A program made the translations under genes and the position numbers. The notes beneath the pieces are model-generated. The model had not been told where the DNA came from. It did no database searches and saw only the letters and a list, made by a program, of their open reading frames with translations. From NCBI GenBank assembly GCA_907165135.1, contig OU015568.1:8060001-8124000 (forward strand): a stretch of DNA of 64,000 nucleotides, in the 5' to 3' direction. Positions 1 to 59,893 of this stretch are shown here, in pieces. Position 1 is the first letter of the stretch, and each line of letters opens with the position of its first letter. This DNA comes from Oikopleura dioica (Eukaryota; Animalia; Chordata).

Positions 1-456
<456 letters not shown>

Positions 457-1322
457 TTTCGATTGGCGACTCCGGTTTTCCGATGCCCGATTTCTGCCGA
501 CTGACTCTAGAATTCCGCATTTAGCAGTACTTTCTCTCTCAGAGAATTTTTCAGAAAGGCAAATCTGATTTCGCAGCTCATGAAGTTGGATAAGAAGTTA
601 CTTTCGATTACATAATTTTCATACGGTTATATCTCTAGAATTTCGCTCTTCGGAAAATCTCTAAAGATTCATCAAAATGTCTCTTAATCGTGTCTCAATC
701 AAATTTCACGTAAATTTCGGTATCGGGAGGAATGCAGTGGGAGATAAGGAAAAAGGAAAGTTACGCTAGTGTTGTCTGAGAATTGAAGGATCGAGGCGGT
801 GGCCAATCAAAATCGCGAGCCGGCCAAATGAGAGGCCAATCGAGCGGGACGCTCTTGGGCGCGCGTTGTGCAATTCTCACGAATCGACGCGAAAATGAAG
901 AGATTCGCGCCCAAGGAAGACATCCAATCTACTGAAAACACGCCTCTGGCCAGATCTCATTAATTTTGCCATAGAATCTTACCCAGATTGATAGATCGAA
1001 ATATTAATTTTTCAGTATCAAATACCTAAATCTTTTAGATTTTAATATTAATTAGTAATAAATATTTATTTTAATCGGTAAAATTAATTATTATTTAGCA
1101 GAAATAGAATTTATACATTATGAATTATGCATAATTATGGTGGAATAAAGAAAACCATGGATAAAAGCGTTTTAAAGTTCTCTCTTTTTAGAAATTGATG
1201 GTACATTTCCTCTGACATTACACTTTTCCCATGTAATACTGTGTTAATCTTTCAGTCACACTTTGCACGTGGCTTTTCGAACTACAGTAACTCGACTAAA
1301 GATTACAAGTAATCTTCCTAGA
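457..1322. promoter_or_regulatory. Divergent promoter region between PRPF8 and the TMEM218 operon
   Basis: Lies between head-to-head start codons; GGCCAATC boxes at ~801-808 and ~834-841 in a GC-richer patch. Confidence 0.4.
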
Positions 1323-1838
1323 ATGATTGGCCCTGGAGTTTGGATCCTCATCGTTGCTTGGAGCCTCGCGCTCGTTGGGTTTCTCTTCTTCGTAAGAAAA
1401 ATGGCGTGATTCTGACTCTAGCGTTTCTTTTCAGAGCAGAGCAGAAAAGATGGTCTACGCGATATTTCTTCTCATGGTCGCCGTAGCCACTACGATTTTG
1501 CTTGCTGTACTGCCAGAGGAAAGCGCGAATCCGATCTCAAGAACAGTTGAAGAAGAGGAGACCAGTATCAATTCTATTTTGCAAATAGGTAATTATTTAA
1601 ATTCAAGATAGTACCCATAAAGTTCTCTATGTAAGAAAAAGTAAGAAATTAATAAATCGTCGGTCTTTGACTCAAGTTTTTAGATTTCCCCCTTTCTCAG
1701 ATGATACTCATGAGTTCAAATAAATTTTTAGTTTATATCATATTTGCTCCGACCGCACTTCTATCATCCTACGTCGCCTATTACTACACCACCGGGGTCA
1801 TTTCTCTCCGTCCGAAGCCGATCAACAAGCCCTGGTGA
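1323..1838 (+). CDS. TMEM218: TMEM218-like small ciliary transition-zone membrane protein
   Basis: Spliced MIGPGVWILIVAWSLALVGFLFFSRAEKMVYAIFLLMVAVATTILLAVLPEES...ISLRPKPINKPW*. Three hydrophobic segments; the G(P/A)GV(W/F)IL start and basic C-terminus resemble TMEM218. Confidence 0.6.
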
Positions 1839-1942
1839 ATCATTCTTCTTTGCTCAATGTACAAAACACTTGTTTTATTTTTCTACCTGTTTCAAATCTA
1901 TTCTTTTTTTAACGATTCGTGTGTAATTTTTTTATCGCAGAA

Positions 1943-4900
1943 ATGGAGGGGATCGAAATGGACGTAGACTATGAGCGAGACAGGCAGAAAGAAAAAGAGG
2001 AGTATGAAGACGAGAAGAAGCTCCTGCTGACAACGATGACTACCATTGGATTCGACGCAGATGGGAGCTATAAACTCGACCAATACGCCCTAAGTACGCC
2101 CTCTTTTTCCCAACTTCCTTATTATAGCTAATATTTTAAAAAGAGAGTATGAAATGATTTTTATTAAGATTGATAGGTATAAAAATAGTCTAGTCATCAT
2201 AGACATAGGTCGTTAAAATTAAATTTCAGACAGTATCCGAGTAATTATAAAACTCGTTATGAAGCGCGACCCTCACTGCGAAGTGCGTCAAGTAATTGGC
2301 AGCTCGAACATTTGGGAAACCGATTTGATCCCAATTTTAAAGCAGCATTCTGACAGTGAAGACCTCTTCCGATCAGTCATTCGGCTCATGTTCTTACTTT
2401 CTATGCCCACTGCTGAAGTATTCCGACAATACTACGGGAAAGAAGATTTTCCAAAAGACGCAGAGTTTCAGTATAATTACAGAAACGTGGAAGAGACTCT
2501 TTCGAAGTACAAAGAGCTCTTCGACGACGTCGACTTGTGGAAAGCTCTCAAGAGCGAGTTCCAGCGAGTTCTTTCAACTTCTTGGGAGGATCAGTCAAAA
2601 GCGGATTCTGTTTGCGTTGAGAGAATGCTCCATATTATCCGACAAATTCTCCATGTTCCGTCGAACGAAAATGATCAAAATCGAGCTCCTGGAGAGGATA
2701 CTGTCCACGATAAAGTTTGCCGAAGTCTTATAGAATCTGATCTTTCTTCTGTGCTTATCTTGATCGCTTCAAATGACGATTGCGTACAGTACAGACCCCT
2801 TGTCATGGAAATTATCGCGTATATGCTCAGAGAACAGGATCCAAAAGCTCTCGCGCAGGTGATTGTCTTCCTTGATTGCATTTTTTAAAAACGATTAGGA
2901 CAATACGAAAGCAGAAAGAGACGCAATGATGAGTGAGCTCAAAAAAGATGCAGATAAAGAAGCAATGGCCCGACGACTAGCCTCGCAAATGACAAGTTCG
3001 CGTCACTCGCGGTTCGGTGGCACATTCGCCGTCATCAACAATCAGGGAAAGAACATTGTGACAAACAAGCTCTACAAAAATGTTAATGAAGTTTCAAGAG
3101 ACAGAGTCAAGGACAGAACCAAAACGAGAACGAGAAAGTGCAAAGGAGAAGAACTGCATGTTCATAGAACTGCCTCGCGAAAGACGAGAGCGGTTATGCA
3201 GAAATTCTGTGACAGGAAAGATTTTTCAATCGTCTTTTCAAAATATATGAGTATTGAGAAATTCTTGACGTTTCAATTCGAAAATCTTCCGAAAGATTCC
3301 TAGACTACGGTTACAATTCTTGCATGGCATCAGCGCGCCATCAAATTCTCCGCGAAGGCGACACCCTTGAAGAAAACAACGAGGTCTTCTACTTCCACAA
3401 CATGACGGTGTTCATGAACTACGCAATAAACAGGCCAATCTGGAGCCTGTCGCAGAAAATCGGCTTTATTTCTGAGACGCTCTCAATCCCCGCGCTCTCT
3501 TTTATTGAGCGCTCCATGCACAAGTATGACGAGAATATACGCTGCGACAAGCAGAGACAGAATAAATGGACAACGAAACTTAATTTCGCGATTCGAGCTT
3601 TTCAGGTTTGTCTGTCAGCCCCTCCTGAGTCCTTGGGTGGCCCAGAGAATCAATACGGTAGCTTATCGAGTATTTCTAGCAAATTATGAAGACAATTTTG
3701 ACGATGCACAAGTCAAAAGATGAGAGTATGAAGCAATCGGCAAACCAGATCAAAGAACAGATCCTTTATACACCAGAATACAGAGAAATCATTCCAATGC
3801 TCATGAAACAATTCAAGTAAAATTCAAGTGGATTTTGATCGATTGCTTTTAATTTTTGATTAGGCCAAATTTCCAGACGAAAAACTATTTACGAGATCTG
3901 ATCATGGCGCAGCACTGGTTATTAAAGCTCCTCGACGGCAGTAAAGACGTCGTCGTGCGGGCTAAGAAAAAAGGATCAAATCGAAAGCGGGCAAAGAGAG
4001 CAAAGGATAAACCGCAGAAGCCAAAGCCGATTACAGACGAGGCGGAGAAAGATGGAACTTGGAATGATATCGTTGACGATATCAATCTTGCAAGAGTTGG
4101 GGATATTGACGTCGACGAGGTGATGCAATACGGATTGCTGTCAGTAGAAGATGGCTCTATGAAAGGTTAGTTTGATAGCCTTCAACTCTAGCGCTGTAGT
4201 TTCAATTTGTGATTCGTGATATGAATCATATGATTTGTTAATGCTTTGCAGAACGATTTTATATTCGAGTATGCGTTTATTGTCACAGTTTTTTAAATGT
4301 CTCAAGTTCACCCCAAGTTTTGCTTGTGCTATTGATTTCATTTTATAAGAATATCTTTTATCCTCAATCTAACATACTAACCGTAATCAAGGCTAAAGTT
4401 TTCATTTTATCGTTTCTGTAATGAAATGCGGTCTCAAAATGTATTTATATGAAAACTTACAGCTGATGTAGCAGCTGGGCTCTCCCCTATTTTGATGCGC
4501 TTACAGATGCCCTCTAACAGGCATATCAGTCAAAAACAGGCCGCCTAAAATAATAAACAACACTAGGAGAAAGGACATATTTCCTGCCTTGAGCCTTTCG
4601 AGAAATGAAGTTTGATTCTCATATATTCTCAATTAAAATATGATAATTAAGCACTTGGCGCGATTCAACTGGCGCTGCATGGGAGAGAACGCGTGAGAGA
4701 CGTTTCCTCAGCCGAGTTATCGCTTCGATTGCTACGCGCAGCGAAGCACTTGTGGCCTGAGAAGGTTGAATTCGGCGAGTTGGAGAACGAAGTTGAAACG
4801 CTAGAGATTTTATGCAAAGAAAAATTGCCCGACGAGGCGTTTCCTGAAGAACAGGAGAATCAAAGGAATGGGTTTATTTTATTTAGACTTCAAACAGATC

Positions 4901-48551: not shown

Positions 48552-49079
48552 ATGAAAATTTTTGCCCTTCTCAGCGCTGCAGTATTTGGCCAGACAACTG
48601 ATCCACCAACTTCTGCCCCACCAGCCACGATTACTCTAGGAACAACAGTTACCGCTCCAGAGGCTTTTGCGTAAGTGACCGTTTCCTATGCGCTTATTAA
48701 TCGGTGATTTAGTTGCTTGACTTGCAATGCTAACAACGTTGCCGACTGCATCGCCAATGGAACGATGGTTGAATGCCAAGACAGCCAGACGTCCTGCGCT
48801 GTCACCATGCGTAAACGACGAGGAAAAACCTACTTCGTCCAGGCTGGCTGCAAAGCCCTCGACGCCTGCCTCGTCAACAAGAGTCAGAACAACAGAGGTC
48901 CCTGGAAGCTACAGGAGTGCAAGCCATACAACAACAAAAAGATCGAAAATTCTGTCTGCCGCCAATGCTGCGACGGAGCTCCCGAGTGCGTCCAGAACAC
49001 CTTCTTCAACGCAGATGGAACCGACGGAATCCAAAAACGGGCCACATGGATAAACGACTACGTCAGCCAGGACGATTAA
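48552..49079 (+). CDS. Secreted single Cys-rich domain protein (oikosin-type / three-finger-like)
   Basis: Signal MKIFALLSAAVFG, Thr/Pro linker, CLTC...C..C...RKRRG...GCK..AC..NKSQN...QEC...SVCRQCC..C; TATAAAA at ~48482 and ~48532. Confidence 0.75.
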
Positions 49080-49391
49080 GCCCCTTTTTCGTGTATAATT
49101 ATTTTTCGACCGAAAAGTCTTCTTCAGACTTTGAACTCAAAAAACCTTTTCGACAACATTTTCCAAAGGCGCAATGCCAATTGGAAAGAAACTTCCGTGA
49201 AATCAAACTTTATAACCATTTATAACTGATCAATAAAATATCTTTAAAATATGCGGCTTTCCTTTTAATAAAACTCTGCTGAGAAAAGTGACGTGGCTGA
49301 GAAATTGATAAGTAAGAAAGAAGCGGTAGGGCGCTCGTCCGGATTTGAGAAAGCCAAAAAAGTAGATTCTTAGAGAGCAGTTGCTGGAAAA

Positions 49392-50463
49392 ATGTCTTTG
49401 AAAATAATTAAAGAATCAACAAAAAAGACGTGTAGCAGAGCAAAGAGTATATTCAGGTTTGACCAAGGCCGTATGCATCGATTTGATAAGTTTGTTACAG
49501 CAAACAAGTAGAAGAAGAGCCGATCGGGACGGAGATTGATTTAGAGCTACTGGAATACGTTGAAAAGGTCTGCTGATTTATAAAAATTTTCATGGCAAAA
49601 ATTAAGGGATACACTTTGATCAATGAAATTCGTGCTGAGATTTCAAGTCAACAAAAAATTCTTCAAAAAAGACGCGCTTCATTTTTCTTCCGAAAAGGAA
49701 AACGAAAACATGACTTTTCAAAAATCTCGCAGCTTCGTATGTTTCACAAAGAAATGGTAACACTTTTATATTGATAGAAATCTCACTTCTTTTAGAAAGA
49801 GAAGGGAAAGACATTGACAGGCATCGAGGCGAGAATATTAGAAATGCACTGCGAGGCTCAAGGGATTCTTCTTCAGACGCTTATCCACGTAAGTTTCGTT
49901 GATAACTTGTCGTTCTCACGAACTGATGTCTAGGATTACTTTGAGATCGTTGGGAAAATTGATGACACTAAGAGTCGTCTCAAAAACAAGGTATCTTCGT
50001 AAATTATTAAGTTTACAATTGGGATTACTACTCAGATGACTGAAATCGGCTTTGAAAATGCTTCGTACGTAGATGGGCCCCCTAGTCCAAGAATCGTCCG
50101 TTTTGTGGCTCCAGATTGTGCTGAAGAACTGGAGGAGCAAAATGAAACGATAAAAGCAATAGAAGACATAGAAGACAAAATCGACGAGGTTAATTTTCTT
50201 CACAACGTCATAAATCTCACCGTTCATGGTAAAACTAAATCATGTTTTACCGAGAATATCTGCTTTTACTAGGGCAGGGTGAAACTCTTGACAGAATCGA
50301 GCAATATGCTGAAGAAGGAGCATCGCAGCTGGAAAAGGGAGTGAAGAAAACCGCTAAAGCAGCGAGGCAGAAAAAATACTGCAGGATTCTGAAAATTGCT
50401 CTCTTCATTGTCTTGGCACCACTTTTGGTTATTGTCGGTTTGACAGTGATAACCTGGTTTTGA
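49392..50463 (+). CDS. Divergent Qa-SNARE (syntaxin-like)
   Basis: C-terminal SNARE motif IEDKIDEV...VHGQGETLDRIEQYAEEGASQLEKG, basic stretch and tail anchor ILKIALFIVLAPLLVIVGL. Confidence 0.75.
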
Positions 50464-50732
50464 GTTTCCATCGCTGATTCACATCGTGTAAATATAAACT
50501 TATGATTCACAGGATCAATATAAAAAAAGATCATAGAATAAATTTCTCAAAAATGTACTCGATCTTCTTCAAGCGTTCCTAAATGAACTTTCAGGTGACG
50601 AAATAAAGTAAAATTCACTTGCGTCAAGAGAAATTTAATTGCAAACAGCAAATTCATTTTGAACCGCTGAATGCATAAAAGCGAATTTCCCAGCCAACAT
50701 GATCAATTTAAATTTCACATTGTTTTCTAAAA

Positions 50733-52474
50733 ATGAAGCTTTTATCGACTTTTCTGGCGTCGGCCTTTTCTCAAACATGTCCGAAACTGGCCGATAATCC
50801 GAATTTTCAGGTTTATCCTTCGGAAGAGAGAGTTTTTAAAGAGAAGCTTTAGAATATTGCTCACGCTACTGGACACAATGGGTGTGCACAATCAACAATT
50901 ATCGGGCACAACCAGGAATGTAACGTCAAATGCGCAAGTGGTTACGAATTGAACAGTCAGGACTGGGCCCTACCCGCCAAATGCAAGGTTCTTGACGGCG
51001 TGGATCCCTACTGGACCTTTTCGGGGAAGTATGGAAGTGGCGAGTCAAACAAAGTCGCTGAATTCGGTTGCTGCCTCAAGCATTCTTTGAAAGTCGGACA
51101 CACGCTCAAGGCTTGGAATTTAAATAGAAACTTTGGCACACCCTATGCCGAGGCAGATGCTAACTTTGCTTTGTTCAACATGTTCGTAAAGAACAACTCC
51201 AAATGGTCCACTGCAGGTAATCTTCAAGTTTTTCCTACTCTAAATCATTTATAAGCGACAAATGGGTACTCTTTCTTACTCGTATTCCCAAACATTTTGC
51301 CGGCTGATGTCACCGTAAAGACTTTTGCTCGGCTAGAAGTCACTGACGTCTACAGAGATCCTCGAAGCGCGAAAACCCTCGTCAGGTTGAACTCTAAGCC
51401 TGGATTTGAGTCCTTTCCACTTGATTCGAAAATTGCACTTATGTTCGCGCTTGAATCGGCTCCTGGAGGAACGAATATCAAAGACTACGCAGATAATAAT
51501 GCTATCTCAGTGAAGTTTTACCATGAACGGCACCCGTGCTTTTGCGCAGGCAATACTGACTTGTGCAGTTATCTCGTGCCACCACCGACAAAATGTTAGC
51601 GATCATTTTTATCTTCCTTTTATAACTATTTTTATAGTCGCAAGTTTCAACATTCAGGTCTTCGGAACGACAAAATACGGCAAGACAGAAGTGAAGGATC
51701 AAATCGTTCAGATATTGAACAGATACGACATTGCTACAACTCAGGTTAAATTGTTTGAACATTGACATTTAAACTTTTCAGGAAATCCGCGATAGTAGTG
51801 AGACCGCGTTCCCCAGCCTTGTCGGAGACATCAACGCTGTGAACGACATCTATGACTGGTGGACTGGGGCTCGCCAAGGAACCACAAGCAGCAAAGAACA
51901 AGTCGGCTTTATCTGGGATCGAAACGATTTCTCCAAGGTCGATGGTTACGATTTCGACGACTCTTCAACCCTCTGGTTCGAGCGACCACCAACTGTGCTT
52001 GTTCTCGAGCGAGTAAGCGTTAATTATGAGCAATTTCAAACTCAAAAACTGGGAATCATTTCCGGCCATCTGAAGCCGGTCACTGGAGTCAGTGACATGG
52101 TTACTGAAGACGAAATCAACCACTTGCAAGATGTCTACAACGATCTCCTTGTTAAACACCCAGACATCAACGACGTTTTAATTGTTGGTGACTTCAACGC
52201 TGACTGCAACTATGTTGCGAATCCCGAAAGTCTCACTCTCTACACAGAACCTTCCAATGACTGGCTCATCCCCTTTGAAGCTGACACTACAGTATCCCCC
52301 ACCGACTGCGCGTACGATCACATCGTCCTTTATGGAAACATCCGAAACAATGTCGTCAGCTCCGGCGTTTTCGACTACCAGACATACTACGACACCGACC
52401 AGATTTTCTATAACGGAGACCCAATTACCGACCTAATCTCCGATCACTTCCCTGTAGAGTTTGAGTTTTTCTAA
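50733..52474 (+). CDS. Secreted modular DNase I: signal + sushi-like + unknown domain + DNase I (~526 aa)
   Basis: Four GT-AG introns (42, 39, 43, 37 nt) give one 527-codon frame. DNase I motifs FNIQVFG, QEIRD, KEQ, GHLKP, GDFNADC, YDHIV, ISDHFPVEF. Confidence 0.85.
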
Positions 52475-53183
52475 GTACCGACTGCAGAAAATAAACGACA
52501 TAGATTTCTTCCACTCCGTTTTCTACAGTTCTTCCTAACCGTTCACCATTTTTCTAAGCTAACGTCCTGCAAGAAATGACACAAAAAGAGTTTTACAGAG
52601 ATAGGTTTTTATTGCTTTTTTTTGCAATAATATCATCTTCTTTTTTCCTTTTGGCTTGAGATGCCGGTGGAAACTTGGATAATTCGGCAGGCTCGATGAA
52701 TCTCCATCTTGGAGTTCATAACAGAGAGTGCTTCTATGAAACCCTCTCTGAAGCACACTCTTTCGCGAATTCTTAATTATTTATAAATTTATAATTCACA
52801 GTCCGAAAAACACTTACCTGTAAAGTATCTGGGCCGGACCTTCAAAAATCCGAAGACTGACTCACTTCGCTCGCCGGAGCCCTGACATCAACAACAAATC
52901 TAGAGATTTTTCAAGGCATCTAGAGAAACAGCTTCTTCATTCATCAACACCCCTGAGGGCTAGAAGGGGAAAGCAACATCTACAGAGCTCTAGAAAATAA
53001 TCGTAAACAACCTTTGTCAATTCAGATTCCTTTGTATACGACCCTGAGGGTCAGGGTCTGAGCTTATATTCTTTCAAAGAGCATAAGTTCATAAATTGTG
53101 AGCAGGATTACTCGTAAAACCGCAAAATAAAGACTTTCGAGCAGAGGCGTTGCTTTTCAGTAGAGTTAATTTTCCATCAACGG

Positions 53184-55099
53184 ATGTTGTTAATTTTGCT
53201 TTTTCACGCTGTTTTTGCCCAAAACGGAGATGGGCCAATTTCAGATATAATAAATGGAAATGGAACGGTTAGGTACGATACAACAACAGTCGGAAACTCT
53301 AGCAATTATCAAGACGAAAGTAGAAGGCAAAAATTGAAAGAGGATGAGGTGCAAGTCCGGGCTATTTTCGGCATAATAGTTGGCAACGATGATTTAATCA
53401 ATGCATGTTACGAAGCTGCCAGAGCGTATCAAATCGTCGATGGCGATTTTCAAACAACCGTTTCCACAAATTTGACCAATATTTTCACGAATGGGCAAGT
53501 AGCAATAAGCGGGAACACGCCTTTGGCTGGTTATTTTAATCAAACTTTTACATCGGCGCTGGAACCCATCAACCCAGAAATATTAGAGTTTGGAGGAGAA
53601 GGATTTGATGATGATTTTCTCGATCGCACCGATTATGTGTTTTCCGATGATTTCATTTACTGCAACATTTTAAACCGCCAAGTTGAGCAGTACGAAAACT
53701 CGGTAAGTCGTCCGAAAATATCTTGATTGACTTTCAATGTCTAGGAGCTTCTTACAGTTACTTTCGCCTTTCGCTCAAAAATAGAAATTGACGAAGAAGA
53801 GTTTTCTGCTACTCTTGAATTCGCCCTCACAAAACGAAACCTGCAACTGCTCAAGATCATCCCTTACACTCCCGAAACAATGGTATATTTCATCGTCCAA
53901 ATCTGTACTGTCGCCATTGTCGGAGCTGGAGGATTGGGTCTTTTGATTGGAAACATCATTGCTGGTGGCTGTTCAACCGTTTTCCACTCACTCATGATGG
54001 GAGTATTGCAAGTAGTAGACATTTACCCTGATGTCTACACATGGTACGAGTACAACACTGATGATAAAATTGCCGTGTCCGTTAATTCCTACGTGTCAGT
54101 CTTCTTGATCGGTAGGAAGCTCTAGGATGACCTGAAAACTAAACTTTTGTCAAAGTATTCAGCGCGATGAAAGTCGTCAATTTTATGGTTACGTTGTTTC
54201 TTCTTTTCGCCAAAGAAAGAGTTGACAACAACGAGGACAAATGCCTTGGAAAATCATTCAGCTTGATTGTGGAAAATAATATCATTTTGGACAGTCTTGG
54301 CTGGATTCAGAAATTACTTCTTTACTTTTATGAATGATTTCAATTCTCTTAATTGTCTTAATCCTTCGTAAAGTAATGAAATCAAAAATAGATGGCTAGA
54401 AACATGATTCCAGGGAGCCAAGTAACAAATGCTTTCTGGGTCTCTATTTTTGCCTTTATCATTCTTCAAGCAATCAAAATCATTGAAGCGCTTGCATCTT
54501 TGTGTATGCCTAAATGTGGCTGCAAACAGGTTTTTGATAAAATAGTGGAAGTTTTCATTTCTAGTGTCTCCAATTTCACAAAGAGCAGAAAAAGCTGGAT
54601 AAAGCGACAGGAACTTGCTCGAAAAGGATGGGATTCGTTTTGCTCTTCATCAAGCTTTCTGCTGCGATTTGTTTTGCAGTAGAAACAGTTCAGGCGTACG
54701 TGATTGACAACTGCGTTGAGATCAATGTAAAAACAACGATTGAAGATGACAAAAGTGCCTTTTGTAAAAGTTTACCAGTACCGGTTGATCATAACTGGTA
54801 TCGGCGACGAGTACAAGGTATAAAGCCTGGGTTACCTAAATGAGAAAATATAATTGCTGTTCAGAGACCGGGTTTTGCATTGAAAATGAACTGATCGATG
54901 GTGCTCAAGATTTCAAAACAGTCGTCTATCCTTTCCGATCTGGCTGCACGAATATGATTGAACGAAGCTTTATTGGTATTCTTAGAGTAAAACTTTGTTT
55001 GCTCCAAACTTTTTAGCTTTCACTGGCATCTCGCTGATTTTGGCCTTCTTAGTCACAGTAACGACTCTACTTGGTCACAGACCGAAGTCATTTTTCTGA
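53184..55099 (+). CDS. Orphan multi-pass membrane protein with a ~200-aa extracellular N-terminus
   Basis: Signal MLLILLFHAVFA, N-glycosylation-rich ectodomain, then several hydrophobic segments across exons; ends GHRPKSFF*. Confidence 0.6.
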
Positions 55100-55327
55100 A
55101 AATCAGTCAAATTTTCATGAAATAAATTAATATTTCCTCGATTTTACGTCTAAATTCACTTGTCCAAAAATGGTTCGCCCAAAAAACGATCGTTTTTACG
55201 TCAATCTGACTCAGCGACAGGATTTCAGCGCATCTTTTCAGCGTCTCCCGTAAAAAAAATAAAATCGATACTGTTCCTCGATTCGGATTTTCATTCCCTA
55301 ACAATGAATTAAATCATTTTTGTGCCG

Positions 55328-56197
55328 ATGAGTTCTTTACAAGGAACTGATTACTACGCGGTTTTGGGAGTCTCGAAAAACGCGACAGAGGAAGAAATTG
55401 ATAATGCGTTTAGAAAAGCAGAGGCGAAATTCAAGTGGAAGAAGGAAAGCGTTGAAGGATTTTTGAATTTCAAAGATTTCGAATTTTTTAATTTCAACGC
55501 CGGAAAAGGATGCATACAATATCTTGAAAGAATTACTCTTCGTCGCGGAAGTTGGACAGAACGTAGAAGATATCCTCATGCTCGATAAAAATATTCAATT
55601 TATTCTTTTTCAGTGCAATGTGACAGATGAAATCTCGGAATCCTGGAAGCAACGGGAACTGGAGAAAATGAGAAGAGAGCTTGGACCTGTCGGGGGCGTG
55701 GGACACTTTTGGGGGAATGATCGAATGATTGCGACTGGTGGAGTGAGAAATTGGATGGAAGAATCGGAAATGGAGAATATTCTTATGCTCCTGGCTTTGG
55801 GAGAAACCAAAATTAACCTCAAGGAACGGGAGCTTTCTTGCAATTTTTCTATCGAATAAATGGTTTCTGAAAGCTCCAATTGAAGTTTTGGTGGAGCCAG
55901 GATCTGGAGGCAAAGGGAAACGGATGGAATATCAAGTTCAAAAGCGCGAAAGGAGGATATGGCACGTATAATCTTTGGATTTGGAAAACCGGTAAAGACT
56001 AGCGTGGAAAATTTGTTGATGAAAATTAAGAAGGGAATGTGCGATTTAAAGCGCTGACGCAAGAAATCAACTTTGTTAATGGAGACGAGTACAACAGAAA
56101 AGAAATCAACAGTGAACCAGACGATGGGAAGCAAGTTATCAAATACGAGAGCGAAGGCCGTTGCGGTTATTTCAGATTTAATGTCAACCTACTGTGA
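55328..56197 (+). CDS. J-domain-like protein lacking the HPD motif
   Basis: DYYAVLGVSKNATEEEIDNAFRK-AEAKFK...DAYNIL. The 3' exons to 56197 are tentative; AATAAA follows. Confidence 0.5.
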
Positions 56198-56277
56198 ATA
56201 AAGCTTTTGTAGACATGCAATAAAATTATAAACTTTAGAACATTTGGTTGATAAACAGACAAGCAGCAGCAGCCATC

Positions 56278-56396
56278 GCTTAGCGTCATACCGCGTAGAA
56301 TGAACCAGTTCTCGTCCGATCACTGAAGTTAAACTACGACGGGCGGGGTTAGTACTTACATGGGTGACCGGTTGGGAATACCTCGTGCGCTAAGCA
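56278..56396 (+). rRNA. 5S rRNA
   Basis: 119 nt, GCTTAGCGTCATACC...GATC...GTTAGTACTT..ATGGG.GACC...GGGAATACC..GTGCGCTAAGCA followed by a TTTT Pol III terminator. Confidence 0.96.
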
Positions 56397-56654
56397 TTTT
56401 GACGTTTTTGCGAAGAAAAACAATCATCCTTTTCCCACGTATACATTTTTGATTGCCGTTCACTCGAGCAATGAGAAGCTAGTAAGAAAATCGCTGTGAG
56501 TTCGCATCGAAAAGGTGTTTAGAGTGGAGCTTGCGTGGCGGGCGGCGTGGCACTTGAGAAAAAGCGCCCTCCACCGCGCGCTTCTGTGAAAAGAGGCCGA
56601 AAATAGGAGCGCGCAGCGACAAAACGACCTCGAAATCAAGCACCCCTTCTCTTT

Positions 56655-56745
56655 ACTCATCCCATTTTTGAGTCCGATTTCGATTGTCTAACAGGTAAGA
56701 ATCGTCTCCATGCCCTCTCTCTCCCATCCCTCTCGCCTCTTACAA
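56655..56745 (+). ncRNA. Spliced-leader (SL) RNA gene
   Basis: ACTCATCCCATTTTTGAGTCCGATTTCGATTGTCTAACAG (56655-56694), the 40-nt O. dioica leader as I recall it, followed by the GTAAGA donor. 3' end estimated. Confidence 0.93.
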
Positions 56746-57159
56746 ACAAGAACAAACTACGAAAGTGAAACCACGTACAGCTGTGTTCGTACTGACTCGC
56801 TTTTTGGAAATTCTTAAGAACTAAAGTGACCCTTTAAGTTTTCGAAAATTCCACTTCCGGTCCGATTCTAGAGCCGGAACTTGACGAAATTTAGGAGTTA
56901 GGGTAAAGTGATGATTTCCTATACTTTAAAAAAAGAATCGATCCCGACGGTGGTCAAACCAACCGGTTAAAACTGAATAAAATTTCATCAATTTATGTCT
57001 TTTTTCACTCCTAAATTTCGTCAAGTTCCGGCTCTAGAATCGGACCGGAAGTGGAATTTTCGAAAACTTAAAGGGTCACTTTAGTTCTTAAGAATTTCCA
57101 AAAAGCGAGTCAGTACGAACACAGCTGTACGTGGTTTCACTTTCGTAGTTTGTTCTTGT

Positions 57160-57250
57160 TTGTAAGAGGCGAGAGGGATGGGAGAGAGAGGGCATGGAGA
57201 CGATTCTTACCTGTTAGACAATCGAAATCGGACTCAAAAATGGGATGAGT
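57160..57250 (-). ncRNA. Spliced-leader (SL) RNA gene, mirror copy
   Basis: Exact reverse complement; leader exon at 57211-57250. Confidence 0.93.
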
Positions 57251-57508
57251 AAAGAGAAGGGGTGCTTGATTTCGAGGTCGTTTTGTCGCTGCGCGCTCCT
57301 ATTTTCGGCCTCTTTTCACAGAAGCGCGCGGTGGAGGGCGCTTTTTCTCAAGTGCCACGCCGCCCGCCACGCAAGCTCCACTCTAAACACCTTTTCGATG
57401 CGAACTCACAGCGATTTTCTTACTAGCTTCTCATTGCTCGAGTGAACGGCAATCAAAAATGTATACGTGGGAAAAGGATGATTGTTTTTCTTCGCAAAAA
57501 CGTCAAAA

Positions 57509-57627
57509 TGCTTAGCGCACGAGGTATTCCCAACCGGTCACCCATGTAAGTACTAACCCCGCCCGTCGTAGTTTAACTTCAGTGATCGGACGAGAACTGG
57601 TTCATTCTACGCGGTATGACGCTAAGC
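57509..57627 (-). rRNA. 5S rRNA, mirror copy
   Basis: Exact reverse complement of 56278-56396. Confidence 0.96.
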
Positions 57628-57779
57628 GATAGCTGCTGCTGATGGTCCGTTAATCAACCAAATGTTCTAAAGCATATAATTTTAACGCAAAGAACTCGAT
57701 TTCTAACGAAAGGATTCCTACGGCAACCAAATGATCAAGCATCTGAAAATATGACAGCTTTCATTTTTTTCTGTTTATT

Positions 57780-59893
57780 TTAAGCGATAGAGAAAGAAGG
57801 ATTATTCTCGCTAGTTGCTTCTTGATTCTGCTGTCCGGGAGGTGCTGGTTTCGTTGGAGAAACAGTGAAGAACATAGTTTTTATAGTCACAATGATTTTC
57901 AGGACAAGCAGAATGCATGTTAGTCCAATAACCGGCTGGAACATGAAGAGACTTTGATACTTGCTTCCTTGAGTTTTTCATGCTTTCAATTCCAAGACCT
58001 TCATGAAATATGAGAAACTCAGACTTTGCTCATTTCCAAGCTCCTGCATCAGTGACTCCCTCGATGCACTTATATCCTTGTTTATTGAATCAATTGAATA
58101 ATGAACTTCTTTGAAATGACTTTTGAGATAGTCATTGATGGTTTTCAAGCATTCCTCCGATTTTTCTAATCAAATAAAATTGCAAAATATTCGACAAATC
58201 GGTTTTCATTACTTGGCGCTCTGCATCCGCTCATTGGATAGTAGAGGAATTGAAGATGTTTCTGTCTTCTATATTCCTCATCGCGTCTTGACCAGTAATC
58301 AAGTTTGTTAAGATCCAAAGCTCCTGGATTTTCAACGAGCGGTGGCTCACATTCCTCGTAACCCAAATAGCATCCTCCCTTTTCGTCGATATCAAAACCA
58401 ACGCACGGCTTTTGCAACGGTTTAAACCTCTTTATCTAACGACAAATAATTTTAAAAGGCAAACCATTCCTTTCCATCGACTTTCGAACTTTCACAAAGA
58501 TTGTAGCAGTCGTCGATGCTGGTGACGGGAATTCGTGTTACATTTGCTGCGATTCCGGTCATGTTCCCTGGAGCAGCAGCGCATGAACCTTTTAGAACAT
58601 GTGTACACATAACAGAAAGCTCTTAAAAAAGTATGAGATCTGGCTGTTTTAGTTGTAAGGTCGAAGCCTATAAATTACCGTGACAATCAGTGTTTTCATT
58701 AATACACTCATAATTATGATTAATTTCGTTGACCTCAATGAGCCGATGGCAGTACTCGTCCTCTTTGCAGCTATGCGAGTCCAGACAAGGGTGACCTCAA
58801 ATATTCGTTTTCAGAAAAAAAACCTTTTGTACATACTGCTCCCTCGCCGGCAAATACTCCAAAAAGCAGAATAGCTTCCCTCGTTACAGCACTCGTAGAG
58901 ATGCTGACCTTCGGGAATGCATCTCTCCGTGGCGTGACAAACGTGGTCGCCGGTCCAGCATGGGTTAACTTAAGGATATAGCCTATGAAATTGAACTTTC
59001 ATAGCGCCTAAATGCGACGTCGGATCATTTTATTTCAAAAACAATCCTATCTAAAAATGTATGCAGAACTCGATTCTGGTACTTGTTTAAAAATTTTTAG
59101 TATATTTTTTCTCTGTAGAGCGTTTTGAAATCTTACGATCGCGATTTCTCGAAATTTTTACATTAAATCGCTAAAACTAAACCAATGACTGCATTAGCAA
59201 AATGCTAAACTAAAATATTGTGGCTAGAAAATCCTCAAACTCGGCCAAATTTTCATTCTAGTGTTTTCCTCTTTCTTGCTCTTGTTTTTCTTCCATGCGC
59301 GCTTTTTCGGGTCCAACCAATCAGAGCGCTCTTTCAAACGCGCAGACTCTCTCGGAAAAGAGGAGTCGAGAGATTGAGCACCCAGCGCAGCGCTTTTTAC
59401 ACTATTCACGCGCTGAGGAAGCCTCATGGAAATGGCTCTAAAATCGGTTTTTGTCGGGATAAGAGAAAACCGAAGCCACAATATTGTAGATAAGGGTCTA
59501 GATTACTTTTCTATCAAAAAAAAACTCGACCGATTTAATGTAAATATTTCGAGAAATCGCGATCGTAAGATTTCAAAACGCTCTACAGAGAAAAAATATA
59601 CTAAAAATTTTTAAACAAGTACCAGAATCGAGTTCTGCATACATTTTTAGATAGGATTGTTTTTGAAATAAAATGATCCGACGTCGCATTTAGGCGCTAT
59701 GAAAGTTCAATTTCATAGGCTATATCCTTAATTAACTTTGATAAACTGTAAATTGCAGCTTCTGCCGATTTTTGCCAAAATTCTCTTCAGCAAGCTTTGA
59801 TATCAAACAAAATACCCTTGACTTACGTGGATATGGAATATCACTCGCAAAACAGCTGACTAACAGGGCTAAGAAAAGATAAATTCCCGCCAT
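57780..59893 (-). CDS. EGF-like + PAN domain type I membrane protein (possibly disrupted)
   Basis: Exon 1 MAGIYLFLALLVSCFASDIPYP; LNPCWTGDHVCHATERC; HPCLDSHSCKEDEYC; IDDCYNLC...PCVGFDIDEKGGCYL; TM IGLTCILLVLKIIV. Needs a 1-nt frameshift fix or an atypical 34-nt intron near 58861-58870. Confidence 0.6.
58974..59727. mobile_element. 754-bp TTAA-target MITE with 197-bp TIRs (Kolobok/T2-like termini), copy 1
   Basis: TTAA on both flanks; TIRs 58974-59170 and 59531-59727 differ at one position that I could see; termini GG...CC. Confidence 0.9.

What the first reader, a model, noticed from the sequence alone, without database searches (positions are those of the whole stretch)
50733..52474. Secreted DNase I fused behind a sushi-like module and an unknown beta-type domain
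Seen: a 43-nt GT-AG intron (51595-51637) joins PPTK to FASFNIQ in frame. The DNase exons have no ATG or signal of their own, so the upstream ~270 aa belong to the same protein. Catalytic Glu/His/Asp motifs are intact. The middle domain (WST..GYSFLLVF...VKTFARLEV...VRLNSKP) resembles, by my recollection, a larvacean-expanded CBM2-like extracellular module. Known: animal DNase I enzymes are usually single-domain. Inference: a matrix-tethered nuclease that could clear extracellular DNA or biofilm from the cellulose filter house or gut, or salvage phosphate from eDNA.
Basis: partly seen in the sequence, partly recalled or inferred. Interest (0 to 1): 0.75.

Follow-up and report, generated by a model that had tools for sequence, protein, structure and literature searches.

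The report
Larvacean DNase I with extra domains
This is one real five-exon Oikopleura gene for a secreted DNA-cutting enzyme (DNase I) fused to a sushi-type module and a larvacean-only beta-sandwich domain, an unusual build for an animal DNase I with no evidence yet of what the extra domain binds.

Summary
Window 50733-52474 (+) is one five-exon gene with four GT-AG introns of 42, 39, 43 and 37 nt, encoding about 526 aa. The 43-nt intron 51595-51637 is real: a spliced transcript contig from a close relative joins 51594 directly to 51638. Three paralogs and about ten full-length metatranscriptome cDNAs keep the same junction. One cDNA starts with the Oikopleura spliced leader ahead of the N-terminal ATG.

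The C-terminal 264 aa align with human DNase I residues 2-257 (E 1.4e-39) with all catalytic residues kept. AlphaFold models of orthologs give a CCP/sushi fold for the N-terminal module. The middle ~160 aa form a beta-sandwich closest to CBM2/CBM3 modules (Z 6-8).

By sequence the middle domain is not CBM2. The Pfam CBM_2 model finds genuine CBM2 genes elsewhere in this genome but not here, profile comparison gives 0.3% probability, and no tryptophan strip is conserved. It is not a widely expanded module either: it occurs only beside DNase I genes, including a signal-less, cysteine-free paralog.

House tethering is unsupported. The public model (OKI2018_I69 PAR g10690) wrongly merges the upstream SNARE gene. 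I class it as a new variant of a known kind, of moderate interest.

The parts
50733..50810 (+). Exon 1: start codon, a signal peptide of about 13-14 aa (MKLLSTFLASAFS|Q) and the first Cys (TCP) of the CCP-like module
   Evidence: Read from the sequence. It is 100% aa identical in the sister-lineage contig L023 and has homologs in paralog L004. It aligns to residues 1-26 of full-length relatives P0026 and P0023. The public model P0025 skips it.
50811..50852 (+). Intron 1, 42 nt, GT-AG, contains an in-frame TAG
   Evidence: It is 81% nt identical to L023 with a 1-nt indel, against 95% for exon 1.
50853..51216 (+). Exon 2: the rest of the CCP/sushi-like module (to the GCC at 51066-51074) and the first ~47 aa of the beta-sandwich domain
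   Evidence: In paralog L004 exons 2 and 3 are contiguous in one ORF, so intron 2 is absent there. The CCP fold comes from the ortholog model.
51217..51255 (+). Intron 2, 39 nt, GT-AG, phase 1, contains TAA
   Evidence: It is absent in paralog L004 and 77.5% identical to L023 with a 1-nt indel.
51256..51594 (+). Exon 3: the main part of the larvacean DNase-associated beta-sandwich domain, ending ...CFCAGNTDLCSYLVPPPTK
   Evidence: Paralogs are 71% and 60% identical. Substitutions against L023 by codon position are 5/3/32, which shows purifying selection. Pfam finds no family.
51595..51637 (+).
   Evidence: The spliced contig L027 joins 51594 to 51638. A phase-1 intron sits at the same position in paralogs L002, L003 and L004. 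In L023 it is 42 nt.
51638..51744 (+). Exon 4: the N-terminal 36 aa of the DNase I domain (F-ASFNIQVFG...TTQ), equivalent to DNase I residues 3-38
51745..51781 (+). Intron 4, 37 nt, GT-AG, phase 0
   Evidence: It is removed in L027, P0033 and P0025.
51782..52474 (+). Exon 5: DNase I residues 39-260 equivalent, plus the TAA stop
   Evidence: E 9.6e-27 to human DNase I for this exon alone. E 1.4e-39 for the whole domain via P0025.
52490..52495 (+). AATAAA poly(A) signal 16 nt after the stop
   Evidence: Read from the sequence.

Best explanation
Shown: window 50733-52474 is a single Oikopleura dioica gene of five exons. Its ~526-aa product has four parts in order:
- a short cleavable signal peptide;
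- a cysteine-rich module with a CCP/sushi fold;
- a ~160-aa beta-sandwich domain known only from larvacean DNase I genes;
- a complete DNase I catalytic domain.

The beta-sandwich ends in the sequence that becomes the first strand of DNase I (...PPTK-F-ASFNIQ). So the two are joined with essentially no linker.

Inferred:
- The protein is secreted and cuts double-stranded DNA by the ordinary Ca2+/Mg2+-dependent DNase I mechanism.
- The beta-sandwich is a dedicated accessory domain of the nuclease. It is ancestral to the larvacean DNase I clade and is predicted to be packed in a fixed position on the catalytic domain. I propose it holds the enzyme on a polymeric substrate or particle. The ligand (glycan or nucleic acid) is unknown.
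- The most likely site of action is extracellular digestion of DNA from ingested plankton in the gut. A role in the house is less likely.
For: Gene structure:
- Three paralogs keep the same order of parts and the same phase-1 junction P[PA]TK|F|[AS]SFNI.
- Intron 2 is absent in paralog L004.
- The sister-lineage genomic contig L023 is 88-95% identical in exons and 70-81% in introns. It has 1-nt indels in introns 1-3, and substitutions fall mostly at third codon positions.
- The spliced contig L027 reproduces the 51594|51638 junction.
- About ten 502-520-aa relatives lie on 1.6-1.7 kb intron-free metatranscriptome contigs.
- The L022 cDNA begins with the last 23 nt of the spliced leader. That sequence also lies in the window's own SL RNA gene at 56672-56694 (the SL sequence is given in PMC6883708).

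DNase I:
- Residues 384-647 of P0025 (identical to window exons 2-5) align to human DNase I 2-257 at E 1.4e-39.
- N7, E39, E78, R111, H134, D168, N170, C173, C209, D212, D251 and H252 are all kept.
- Pfam Exo_endo_phos scores 36.2 bits against a cut-off of 24.5.
- The ortholog model matches DNase I with TM 0.88-0.92 and rmsd 1.8-2.6 A.

Accessory modules:
- The AF2 model of the ortholog N-terminal region has pLDDT 85.9 and pTM 0.83.
- Model residues 1-78 match C1s CCP2 (Z 6.8, rmsd 2.1 A, 27% identity). Residues 80-209 match the ChiA74 C-terminal domain (Z 8.0), a CBM2 (Z 6.7) and CBM3 (Z 6.2).
- The full-length ortholog model has pLDDT 91 and pTM 0.81.
- In this genome the domain occurs only beside DNase I genes.
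- On the tree, the one paralog that lacks the domain (L003) is nested among paralogs that have it.
Against: - There is no expression, localisation or activity data for this gene.
- The signal peptide is judged by eye and by the -3/-1 rule only.
- The structural models are of orthologs (37-46% identical in the middle domain), not of the window's own protein.
- Z scores of 6-8 lie in the range the tool calls common for unrelated sandwiches.
- Fixed packing of the domains is inferred from pTM alone, because I could not inspect the coordinates.
- The choice of gut over house is an inference. It rests on the digestive role of vertebrate DNase I, on the number of paralogs, and on the absence of nucleases from the house proteome paper by keyword search.
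Confidence: 0.7

Rival explanations
1. One reading: the middle domain is a working cellulose- or chitin-binding module of the CBM2 kind. It tethers the nuclease to the cellulose house, or to a chitinous or cellulosic surface in the gut, to clear extracellular DNA and biofilm.
For: - The nearest solved folds are cellulose- and chitin-binding modules: the ChiA74 C-terminal domain (Z 8.0), CBM2 3ndy_E (Z 6.7), CBM3 (Z 6.2), and Foldseek probabilities of 0.97-1.0 for CBM3/CBM2.
- O. dioica does build enzymes with binding modules: CBM2-GH9 (L024) and an LPMO-like protein with a sushi-like module and CBM2 (L025).
- Conserved cysteines lie near both ends of the domain, as in CBM2.
Against: - Pfam CBM_2 hits three other loci in this genome but none of the DNase loci at E<=1.
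- hhalign against the genome's own CBM2s gives 0.3% probability.
- No Trp is conserved in the domain, and several members have no Trp at all.
- The domain is kept in a conserved paralog clade without signal peptide or cysteines and with an acidic N-terminus. That clade is P0031 plus the O. dioica locus at C1:7.70 Mb.
- The domain is never found apart from DNase I.
- Keyword searches find no nuclease in the house proteome paper or its supplements.
Confidence: 0.15
2. There are two products. The upstream ORF ends at the TAG inside 'intron 3'. The DNase is made separately, either from an SL-trans-spliced mRNA or from ATG 51523 read through the retained intron. That start would give a stand-alone DNase with a hydrophobic leader (MNGTRAFAQAILTCAV...).
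For: In this window ATG 51523 is in frame with exon 4 through the intron, and its product begins with a hydrophobic stretch. Operons and SL trans-splicing are common in O. dioica (established knowledge; PMC6883708).
Against: - In paralog L002 the exon-4 frame has stops just upstream and no ATG.
- In L023 a 1-nt indel in the intron puts that ATG out of frame, and its ORF hits a stop.
- Substitutions in 51522-51593 fall 0/1/5 by codon position of the exon-3 frame.
- L027 is spliced exactly at 51594|51638.
- All full-length cDNAs carry both parts in one ORF. The one SL seen lies upstream of the N-terminal ATG.
Confidence: 0.02
3. The public gene model is right: a 650-aa SNARE-DNase chimera (OKI2018_I69.PAR.g10690) that skips exon 1 and carries a SNARE domain in place of a signal peptide.
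For: The model is in NCBI and UniRef. Its residues 1-156 map to window 49844-50445 and the rest to exons 2-5.
Against: - The SNARE ORF runs on through its own transmembrane anchor to a stop at 50461-50463, followed by AATAAA at 50537-50542.
- Exon 1 is conserved in L023, in paralog L004 and in all full-length relatives, which start MKL....
- No relative carries a SNARE part.
Confidence: 0.02
4. The beta-sandwich is an inhibitory or chaperoning pro-domain, removed by a protease at the ...TK|F boundary to release an ordinary single-domain DNase I.
For: The domain ends exactly where mature DNase I begins: K384-F385 aligns to K2-I3 of human DNase I. A Lys precedes the boundary in the window's protein.
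Against: - The Lys is present in only 7 of 14 family members. The others have T, L, F, A or N.
- The K/F residues are part of the first DNase I strand.
- The full-length model has high pTM.
- The domain is also kept in the non-secreted clade.
Confidence: 0.08

Closest known systems
Vertebrate DNase I (DNASE1; PDB 4awn, 1dnk, 1atn)
   Same: It aligns along the full mature enzyme (residues 2-257, E 1.4e-39) at 31-33% identity. All catalytic and metal-binding residues and the C173-C209 disulfide are kept. It is a secreted protein with a signal peptide.
   Different: This protein has about 245 extra N-terminal residues forming two folded modules. The C101-C104 loop is missing, there is a 6-residue insertion after H134, Y76 is replaced, and the actin-contact residues (Y65/V67 region) are not conserved (residue roles are from established knowledge of bovine and human DNase I).
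DNase1L3 (PDB 7kiu)
   Same: It is a DNase I paralog in which an appended segment changes what the enzyme can reach (E 6e-28).
   Different: The DNase1L3 addition is a short basic C-terminal tail (established knowledge). Here the addition is an N-terminal pair of folded modules.
CBM2 / CBM3 cellulose- and chitin-binding modules (ChiA74 C-terminal domain 6bt9; 3ndy_E; 4b9c; 6f7e)
   Same: The predicted beta-sandwich fold is similar: Z 8.0, 6.7, 6.2 and 5.4, with 91-117 residues aligned. Cysteines lie near both ends of the domain.
   Different: There is no sequence relationship: Pfam finds nothing, hhalign gives 0.3%, and identity is 6-11%. No Trp/Tyr binding strip is conserved. The domain is always attached to a nuclease rather than to a glycoside hydrolase.
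CCP / sushi modules of complement proteases (C1s CCP2, MASP-1/2) and IL-15R alpha
   Same: Model residues 1-78 superpose with rmsd 2.1-2.5 A over 62-64 residues at 19-27% identity. A Cys framework and a Trp are conserved.
   Different: The Pfam Sushi model does not detect it, even at E<=5. It has six cysteines rather than four before the CC junction.
O. dioica CBM2-GH9 cellulase (L024) and LPMO-like/sushi-like/CBM2 protein (L025)
   Same: They come from the same genome and share the same design logic: a secreted enzyme plus binding modules. One also has a sushi-like module.
   Different: Those carry a genuine Pfam CBM_2 domain (43 and 34.8 bits). The DNase domain is unrelated to it by sequence.
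Multi-domain bacterial extracellular EEP nucleases (for example Vibrio cholerae Xds; from my own knowledge, not tested here)
   Same: An EEP-fold nuclease is combined with non-catalytic binding domains for extracellular DNA.
   Different: The accessory domains are different (LTD and OB-fold types), and so are the EEP subfamily and the lineage.

Membership tests
DNase I (EEP superfamily, Pfam PF03372) | Sequence similarity along the whole catalytic domain | tested here: met
   P0025 residues 384-647 (identical to the window's exons) match human DNase I 2-257 at E 1.4e-39. Exon 5 alone gives E 9.6e-27. PF03372 scores 36.2 bits against a cut-off of 24.5 over profile positions 1-225.
DNase I (EEP superfamily, Pfam PF03372) | Catalytic and metal-binding residues (N7, E39, E78, H134, D168, N170, D212, D251, H252) and the C173-C209 disulfide | tested here: met
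   All are present in the alignment (FNI, QEIRD, SKEQ, GHLKP, GDFNADC, DCAYDH, SDHFP). The numbering is from established knowledge of bovine and human DNase I.
DNase I (EEP superfamily, Pfam PF03372) | DNase I three-dimensional fold | tested here: met
   The model of ortholog P0023 (66% identical to exon 5) matches 1dnk, 2dnj and 4awn with TM 0.90-0.92 and rmsd 1.8-2.2 A.
DNase I (EEP superfamily, Pfam PF03372) | Secretion signal | tested here: inconclusive
   Exon 1 reads MKLLSTFLASAFS|Q, with a hydrophobic core and small residues at -3 and -1. Equivalent leaders occur in all full-length secreted-type relatives. No signal-peptide predictor was available.
DNase I (EEP superfamily, Pfam PF03372) | Ca2+/Mg2+-dependent endonuclease activity on dsDNA | not testable with these tools
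   This needs recombinant protein and an assay.
CBM2 (Pfam PF00553) | Match to the family profile | tested here: not met
   A six-frame scan of the whole genome with PF00553 at E<=1 finds C4:13.49 Mb, C2:8.04 Mb and C4:11.45 Mb but none of the DNase loci. Pfam scans of the exons and of the ortholog N-terminal region find nothing.
CBM2 (Pfam PF00553) | Profile-profile relationship to bona fide CBM2 domains | tested here: not met
   hhalign of the 21-sequence family alignment against the three O. dioica CBM2s gives probability 0.33% and E 0.18.
CBM2 (Pfam PF00553) | Conserved surface aromatic (Trp) strip that binds the polysaccharide | tested here: not met
   No Trp column is conserved in the domain, and five of 14 members have no Trp in it.
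CBM2 (Pfam PF00553) | Beta-sandwich fold of the CBM2/CBM3 type | tested here: inconclusive
   Z is 8.0 (ChiA74 C-terminal domain), 6.7 (CBM2 3ndy_E), 6.2 (CBM3) and 5.4 (CBM2 6f7e). Foldseek E-values are 2e-3 to 5e-2. The tool warns that a best Z of 7-8 is common for unrelated models.
CBM2 (Pfam PF00553) | Binding to cellulose, chitin or xylan | not testable with these tools
   This needs pull-down or ITC with recombinant domain.
CCP / sushi (Pfam PF00084) | Match to the family profile | tested here: not met
   There is no Sushi hit at E<=1 on the exons or at E<=5 on the ortholog N-terminal region.
CCP / sushi (Pfam PF00084) | CCP fold with a conserved Cys framework and Trp | tested here: met
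   Model residues 1-78 match C1s CCP2 (Z 6.8, rmsd 2.1 A, 64 aa, 27% identity), as well as MASP-1/2, IL-15Ra and CD46. The conserved C...C.C...C...W...CC pattern is seen in the family alignment.
Oikosin / house structural proteins | Detected in the house proteome or expressed in the oikoplastic epithelium | tested here: not met
   Keyword searches (nuclease, DNase, Exo_endo_phos, endonuclease) of Hosp et al. 2012 (PMC3390340) give zero hits in the main text and 11 supplements. This is a weak test. Expression was not testable.

The most novel reading that the evidence does not exclude
The beta-sandwich would be a new, sequence-orphan binding module family that arose in larvaceans and was wedded to DNase I. 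In the secreted paralogs it would anchor the nuclease to a polysaccharide surface such as the cellulose house meshes, the food-concentrating filter or mucus nets. The animal would then enzymatically strip sticky extracellular DNA that would otherwise clog its filters. That would be an anti-fouling use of DNase I not described in animals.
Probability: 0.12. Interest if true: 0.7.

Novelty: new variant of a known kind. Interest (0 to 1): 0.4.

Why it matters
Animal DNase I enzymes are treated as single-domain secreted nucleases. Here a whole animal class has coupled the catalytic domain to a lineage-specific folded domain with no Pfam family, plus a CCP module. It then diversified the set into several secreted paralogs, a mucin-linked form that lost the domain, and a form without a signal peptide.

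This gives a defined, testable case of how an accessory domain changes the targeting or substrate handling of DNase I. It also adds a candidate new domain family. The result corrects a chimeric public gene model. Because larvaceans process large volumes of seawater particles, the enzyme's site of action (gut or house) bears on how they digest or shed DNA-rich material.

Tried and rejected
- Pfam scans of each exon and of the ortholog N-terminal region found no family for the first ~260 aa. The only hits were chance ones to Antistasin and Strabismus, below cut-off.
- The two ESM Atlas look-ups (exon 3; middle domain of P0023) gave no usable hit.
- A profile search of PDB sequences with the family alignment found nothing below E 0.7.
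- Two hits of the big profile search, P0011 (a LapA adhesin with 16 repeats) and P0012, are repeat-summed matches to short stretches. I discarded them as not homologous.
- The alternative start at ATG 51523 was considered and rejected.
- Protease activation at TK|F was considered. The Lys is not conserved.
- Literature searches found no description of this architecture. The terms were Oikopleura or larvacean with DNase I or deoxyribonuclease, and DNase1 with carbohydrate-binding module.
- An Rfam scan of 49000-58000 found only the two 5S rRNA genes. Base composition is unremarkable.
- I handed no joined spliced translation of my own to any search. Exons were searched one at a time by reference. 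The joined product was examined only through the public protein P0025 that a database search returned.
Full report
**What is in the sequence.**

Three-frame translation of window 50700-52500 gives a five-exon gene on the + strand:

| Part | Coordinates | Notes |
|---|---|---|
| Exon 1 | 50733-50810 | start codon |
| Intron 1 | 50811-50852 | 42 nt |
| Exon 2 | 50853-51216 | |
| Intron 2 | 51217-51255 | 39 nt |
| Exon 3 | 51256-51594 | |
| Intron 3 | 51595-51637 | 43 nt |
| Exon 4 | 51638-51744 | |
| Intron 4 | 51745-51781 | 37 nt |
| Exon 5 | 51782-52474 | ends in TAA |

- All four introns are GT-AG.
- AATAAA follows the stop at 52490-52495.
- The product is about 526 aa.
- The genome is Oikopleura dioica. 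It has 64.3 Mb in 19 contigs.
- The window carries the 40-nt spliced-leader exon ACTCATCCC...CTAACAG|GT at 56655-56694. That sequence is printed in PMC6883708.
- The SL exon lies between two 5S rRNA genes.
- The public protein with the same sequence is named Oidioi.mRNA.OKI2018_I69.PAR.g10690.

**Is it one protein?**

Four independent lines say yes.

- *Paralogs.* Searching the genome exon by exon found copies at C4:11.83 Mb (L002) and C1:8.80 Mb (L004). Both have the same order of parts on one strand.
  - All copies, and a fourth at C1:15.77 Mb (L003), share a phase-1 intron at ...P[PA]TK|F|[AS]SFNI.
  - In L004 intron 2 is simply absent, so exons 2 and 3 form one ORF.
- *Sister lineage.* A metagenomic contig from another O. 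dioica lineage (L023) is 88-95% identical in exons and 70-81% in introns.
  - It has 1-nt indels in introns 1, 2 and 3.
  - Exon substitutions are concentrated at third codon positions (exon 3: 5/3/32).
- *Transcripts.* L027 (Logan ERR9850596, 88% aa identity in exon 5) joins the base equivalent to 51594 directly to 51638. It also lacks intron 4.
  - About ten relatives of 502-520 aa sit on 1.6-1.7 kb intron-free metatranscriptome contigs, with signal peptide, both N-terminal modules and DNase in one ORF.
  - One of the cDNA contigs (L022, 1,166 nt, encoding the truncated 356-aa P0003) begins with the last 23 nt of the spliced leader, 58 nt upstream of the N-terminal ATG.
  - That frame is closed by stops in L002.
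  - It is shifted out of frame by the intron indel in L023.

**The nuclease.**

- Exon 5 alone matches human DNase I at E 9.6e-27.
- The joined product, seen through the public protein P0025 returned by the word search, aligns at residues 384-647 to DNase I residues 2-257 at E 1.4e-39.
- Kept residues are N7, E39, E78, R111, H134, D168, N170, D212, D251 and H252, plus the C173-C209 disulfide.
- The C101-C104 loop is missing and Y76 is replaced.
- The model of ortholog P0023 superposes on DNase I with TM about 0.9.
- The mature N-terminus of DNase I coincides with the exon 3/4 boundary. There is therefore no linker between the middle domain and the enzyme.

**The N-terminal modules.**

- Pfam sees nothing in the first ~260 aa.
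- A profile of exon 3 searched against 1.84 billion representative proteins found only 18 hits. Every hit long enough to judge also carries DNase I.
- An AlphaFold model of the ortholog N-terminal region (L021:142-837, 21-row alignment) is confident, with pLDDT 85.9 and pTM 0.83.
- Model residues 1-78 match CCP modules: C1s CCP2 at Z 6.8, rmsd 2.1 A and 27% identity, and also MASP, IL-15Ra and CD46.
- Model residues 80-209 match carbohydrate-binding sandwiches:
  - the ChiA74 C-terminal domain, Z 8.0, rmsd 2.3 A over 91 residues;
  - CBM2 3ndy_E, Z 6.7;
  - CBM3, Z 6.2;
  - Foldseek probabilities of 0.97-1.0 but E-values of only 2e-3 to 5e-2.
- So 'sushi-like' is supported at the level of fold. 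'CBM2-like' is supported only as a fold resemblance in a score range the tool flags as common.

**Tests of CBM2 membership fail.**

- The Pfam CBM_2 model, run over the whole genome, finds genuine CBM2 domains elsewhere:
  - a CBM2-GH9 cellulase at C4:13.49 Mb;
  - an LPMO-like protein with a sushi-like module and CBM2 at C2:8.04 Mb;
  - a third locus at C4:11.45 Mb.
- The same scan finds nothing at any DNase locus.
- hhalign between the family alignment and those CBM2s gives 0.3% probability.
- No tryptophan is conserved in the domain.
- The domain is not 'expanded' either. A profile search of the genome finds it only at the three DNase paralogs, plus a weak hit upstream of a fourth, divergent DNase gene at C1:7.70 Mb.

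**What the family says about function.**

- Conserved positions in the domain are mostly polar or core residues: E250, K263, G275-Y276-S277, P287, D289, F295, R297, D306, T312, S318, T344, R363, C368, G370 and N371 in P0025 numbering.
- C366 and C375 are present or absent together in all 14 members, which points to a disulfide.
- A clade represented by P0031 and P0035 has no signal peptide, an acidic N-terminus and none of the cysteines. It still keeps the domain fused to DNase I.
- O. dioica has the ortholog of that clade at C1:7.70 Mb, with a conserved MGDSDPEWE... first exon.
- On a tree of the exon-5 region, all larvacean sequences form one clade (100/99).
- The mucin-linked paralog L003, which lacks the domain, is nested among domain-bearing genes (100/99). 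So the domain is ancestral and was lost there.
- Rows left out of the tree:
  - truncated proteins (P0003, P0004, P0005, P0026, P0036);
  - P0025, which is the same as the window;
  - the protist tandem protein P0034;
  - the multi-exon C1:7.70 Mb gene;
  - vertebrate DNases, for which no sequence was available by reference.
- The full-length ortholog model has pTM 0.81. I take this to mean a fixed arrangement of the three parts, but I could not inspect the coordinates.
- Together these points favour an accessory domain tied to the nuclease itself over a general matrix-binding module.

**Site of action.**

- This is inference. Vertebrate DNase I is a secreted digestive and clearance enzyme (established knowledge). 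Larvaceans have several secreted paralogs, and full-length transcripts assemble from environmental metatranscriptomes.
- By keyword, the house proteome paper and its supplements mention no nuclease.
- The 2026 single-cell preprint lists other gut hydrolases but no DNase.
- My odds are: gut digestion about even, a house role about one in eight, and the remainder other extracellular roles.

**Public annotation.**

- P0025 (650 aa) maps its residues 1-156 to window 49844-50445 and the rest to exons 2-5.
- The first part is a separate tail-anchored SNARE gene. Its SNARE domain scores E 2.9e-7, its own stop is at 50461-50463, and AATAAA follows at 50537-50542.
- The model skips the conserved signal-peptide exon. 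I regard it as a merged gene call.

- No joined spliced translation of my own was given to any search tool. Exons were searched separately by reference.
- The joined product was studied only through proteins that the databases returned.
- The structural models are of orthologs, because the window's middle domain is split by intron 2.
- No contig that I take for human was met.
I used that SL exon sequence after checking it myself.

**Verdict.**

- This is a DNase I with a new accessory architecture, a new variant of a known kind. Interest is about 0.4.

Noticed in passing
window 49844-50463 (+): The upstream neighbour is a tail-anchored SNARE-domain gene with its own stop (50461-50463) and AATAAA (50537-50542). 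The public model OKI2018_I69.PAR.g10690 (650 aa) merges it with the DNase gene and drops both the SNARE membrane anchor and the DNase signal-peptide exon.
   Followed up: yes
window 51523-51765 (+): An 80-aa ORF starts at ATG 51523 and reads through intron 3 in the exon-4 frame, with a hydrophobic start. It is not conserved in frame in L002 or L023 and is taken as chance.
   Followed up: yes
window 56278-57627: Two 5S rRNA genes (56278-56396 +, 57509-57627 -) flank two inverted copies of the spliced-leader exon (the 23-nt 3' part at 56672-56694 + and 57211-57233 -). This is the usual O. dioica 5S-SL linkage, here arranged as a palindrome.
   Followed up: partly
L024 (G000:C4:13487752-13491045), ORF 268-1992 (-): A secreted protein has an N-terminal Pfam CBM_2 domain (43 bits), an acidic linker and a GH9-type cellulase region. 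It is a genuine CBM2 in this animal genome.
   Followed up: partly
L025 (G000:C2:8043230-8046478), ORF 1360-2340 (-): An ORF combines an LPMO-like region, a Thr-rich linker, a cysteine-rich sushi-like stretch and a CBM_2 domain (34.8 bits). The enzyme + sushi + binding-module layout parallels the DNase gene. The LPMO reading is from motif recollection only.
   Followed up: no
L030 (G000:C1:7699800-7704300), from about 904: A divergent DNase I paralog has no signal peptide. It has a conserved acidic first exon (MGDSDPEWELSEEDF...), a weakly matching middle domain and a multi-exon DNase. It is the ortholog of metatranscriptome proteins P0031 and P0035, which lack all the cysteines. It may be an intracellular DNase I.
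   Followed up: partly
L003 (G000:C1:15770566-15774261, - strand) and L005 (C1:15766684-15769986): This paralog replaces the middle domain with a Thr/Ser/Ala-rich mucin-like linker after one or two CPxL..NG-type sushi-like modules. About 4 kb away lies a partial second copy (exon 4 plus the first ~100 aa of exon 5), either a tandem duplicate or a pseudogene.
   Followed up: partly
L006 / L008 (G000:C1:134804-145198) and L011 (C1:11202586-11205960): There are further, more distant DNase I-like matches. The L011 match contains four stop codons and may be a pseudogene.
   Followed up: no
P0034 (EukProt Hpha transcript, 676 aa): A protist protein has two tandem DNase I domains and a Pro/Ser-rich tail. 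It shows that multi-domain DNase I proteins exist outside animals.
   Followed up: no
window 53184-53726 (+): The downstream neighbour is a 180-aa ORF with a signal-like start (MLLILLFHAVFAQ...). Its identity is unknown.
   Followed up: no
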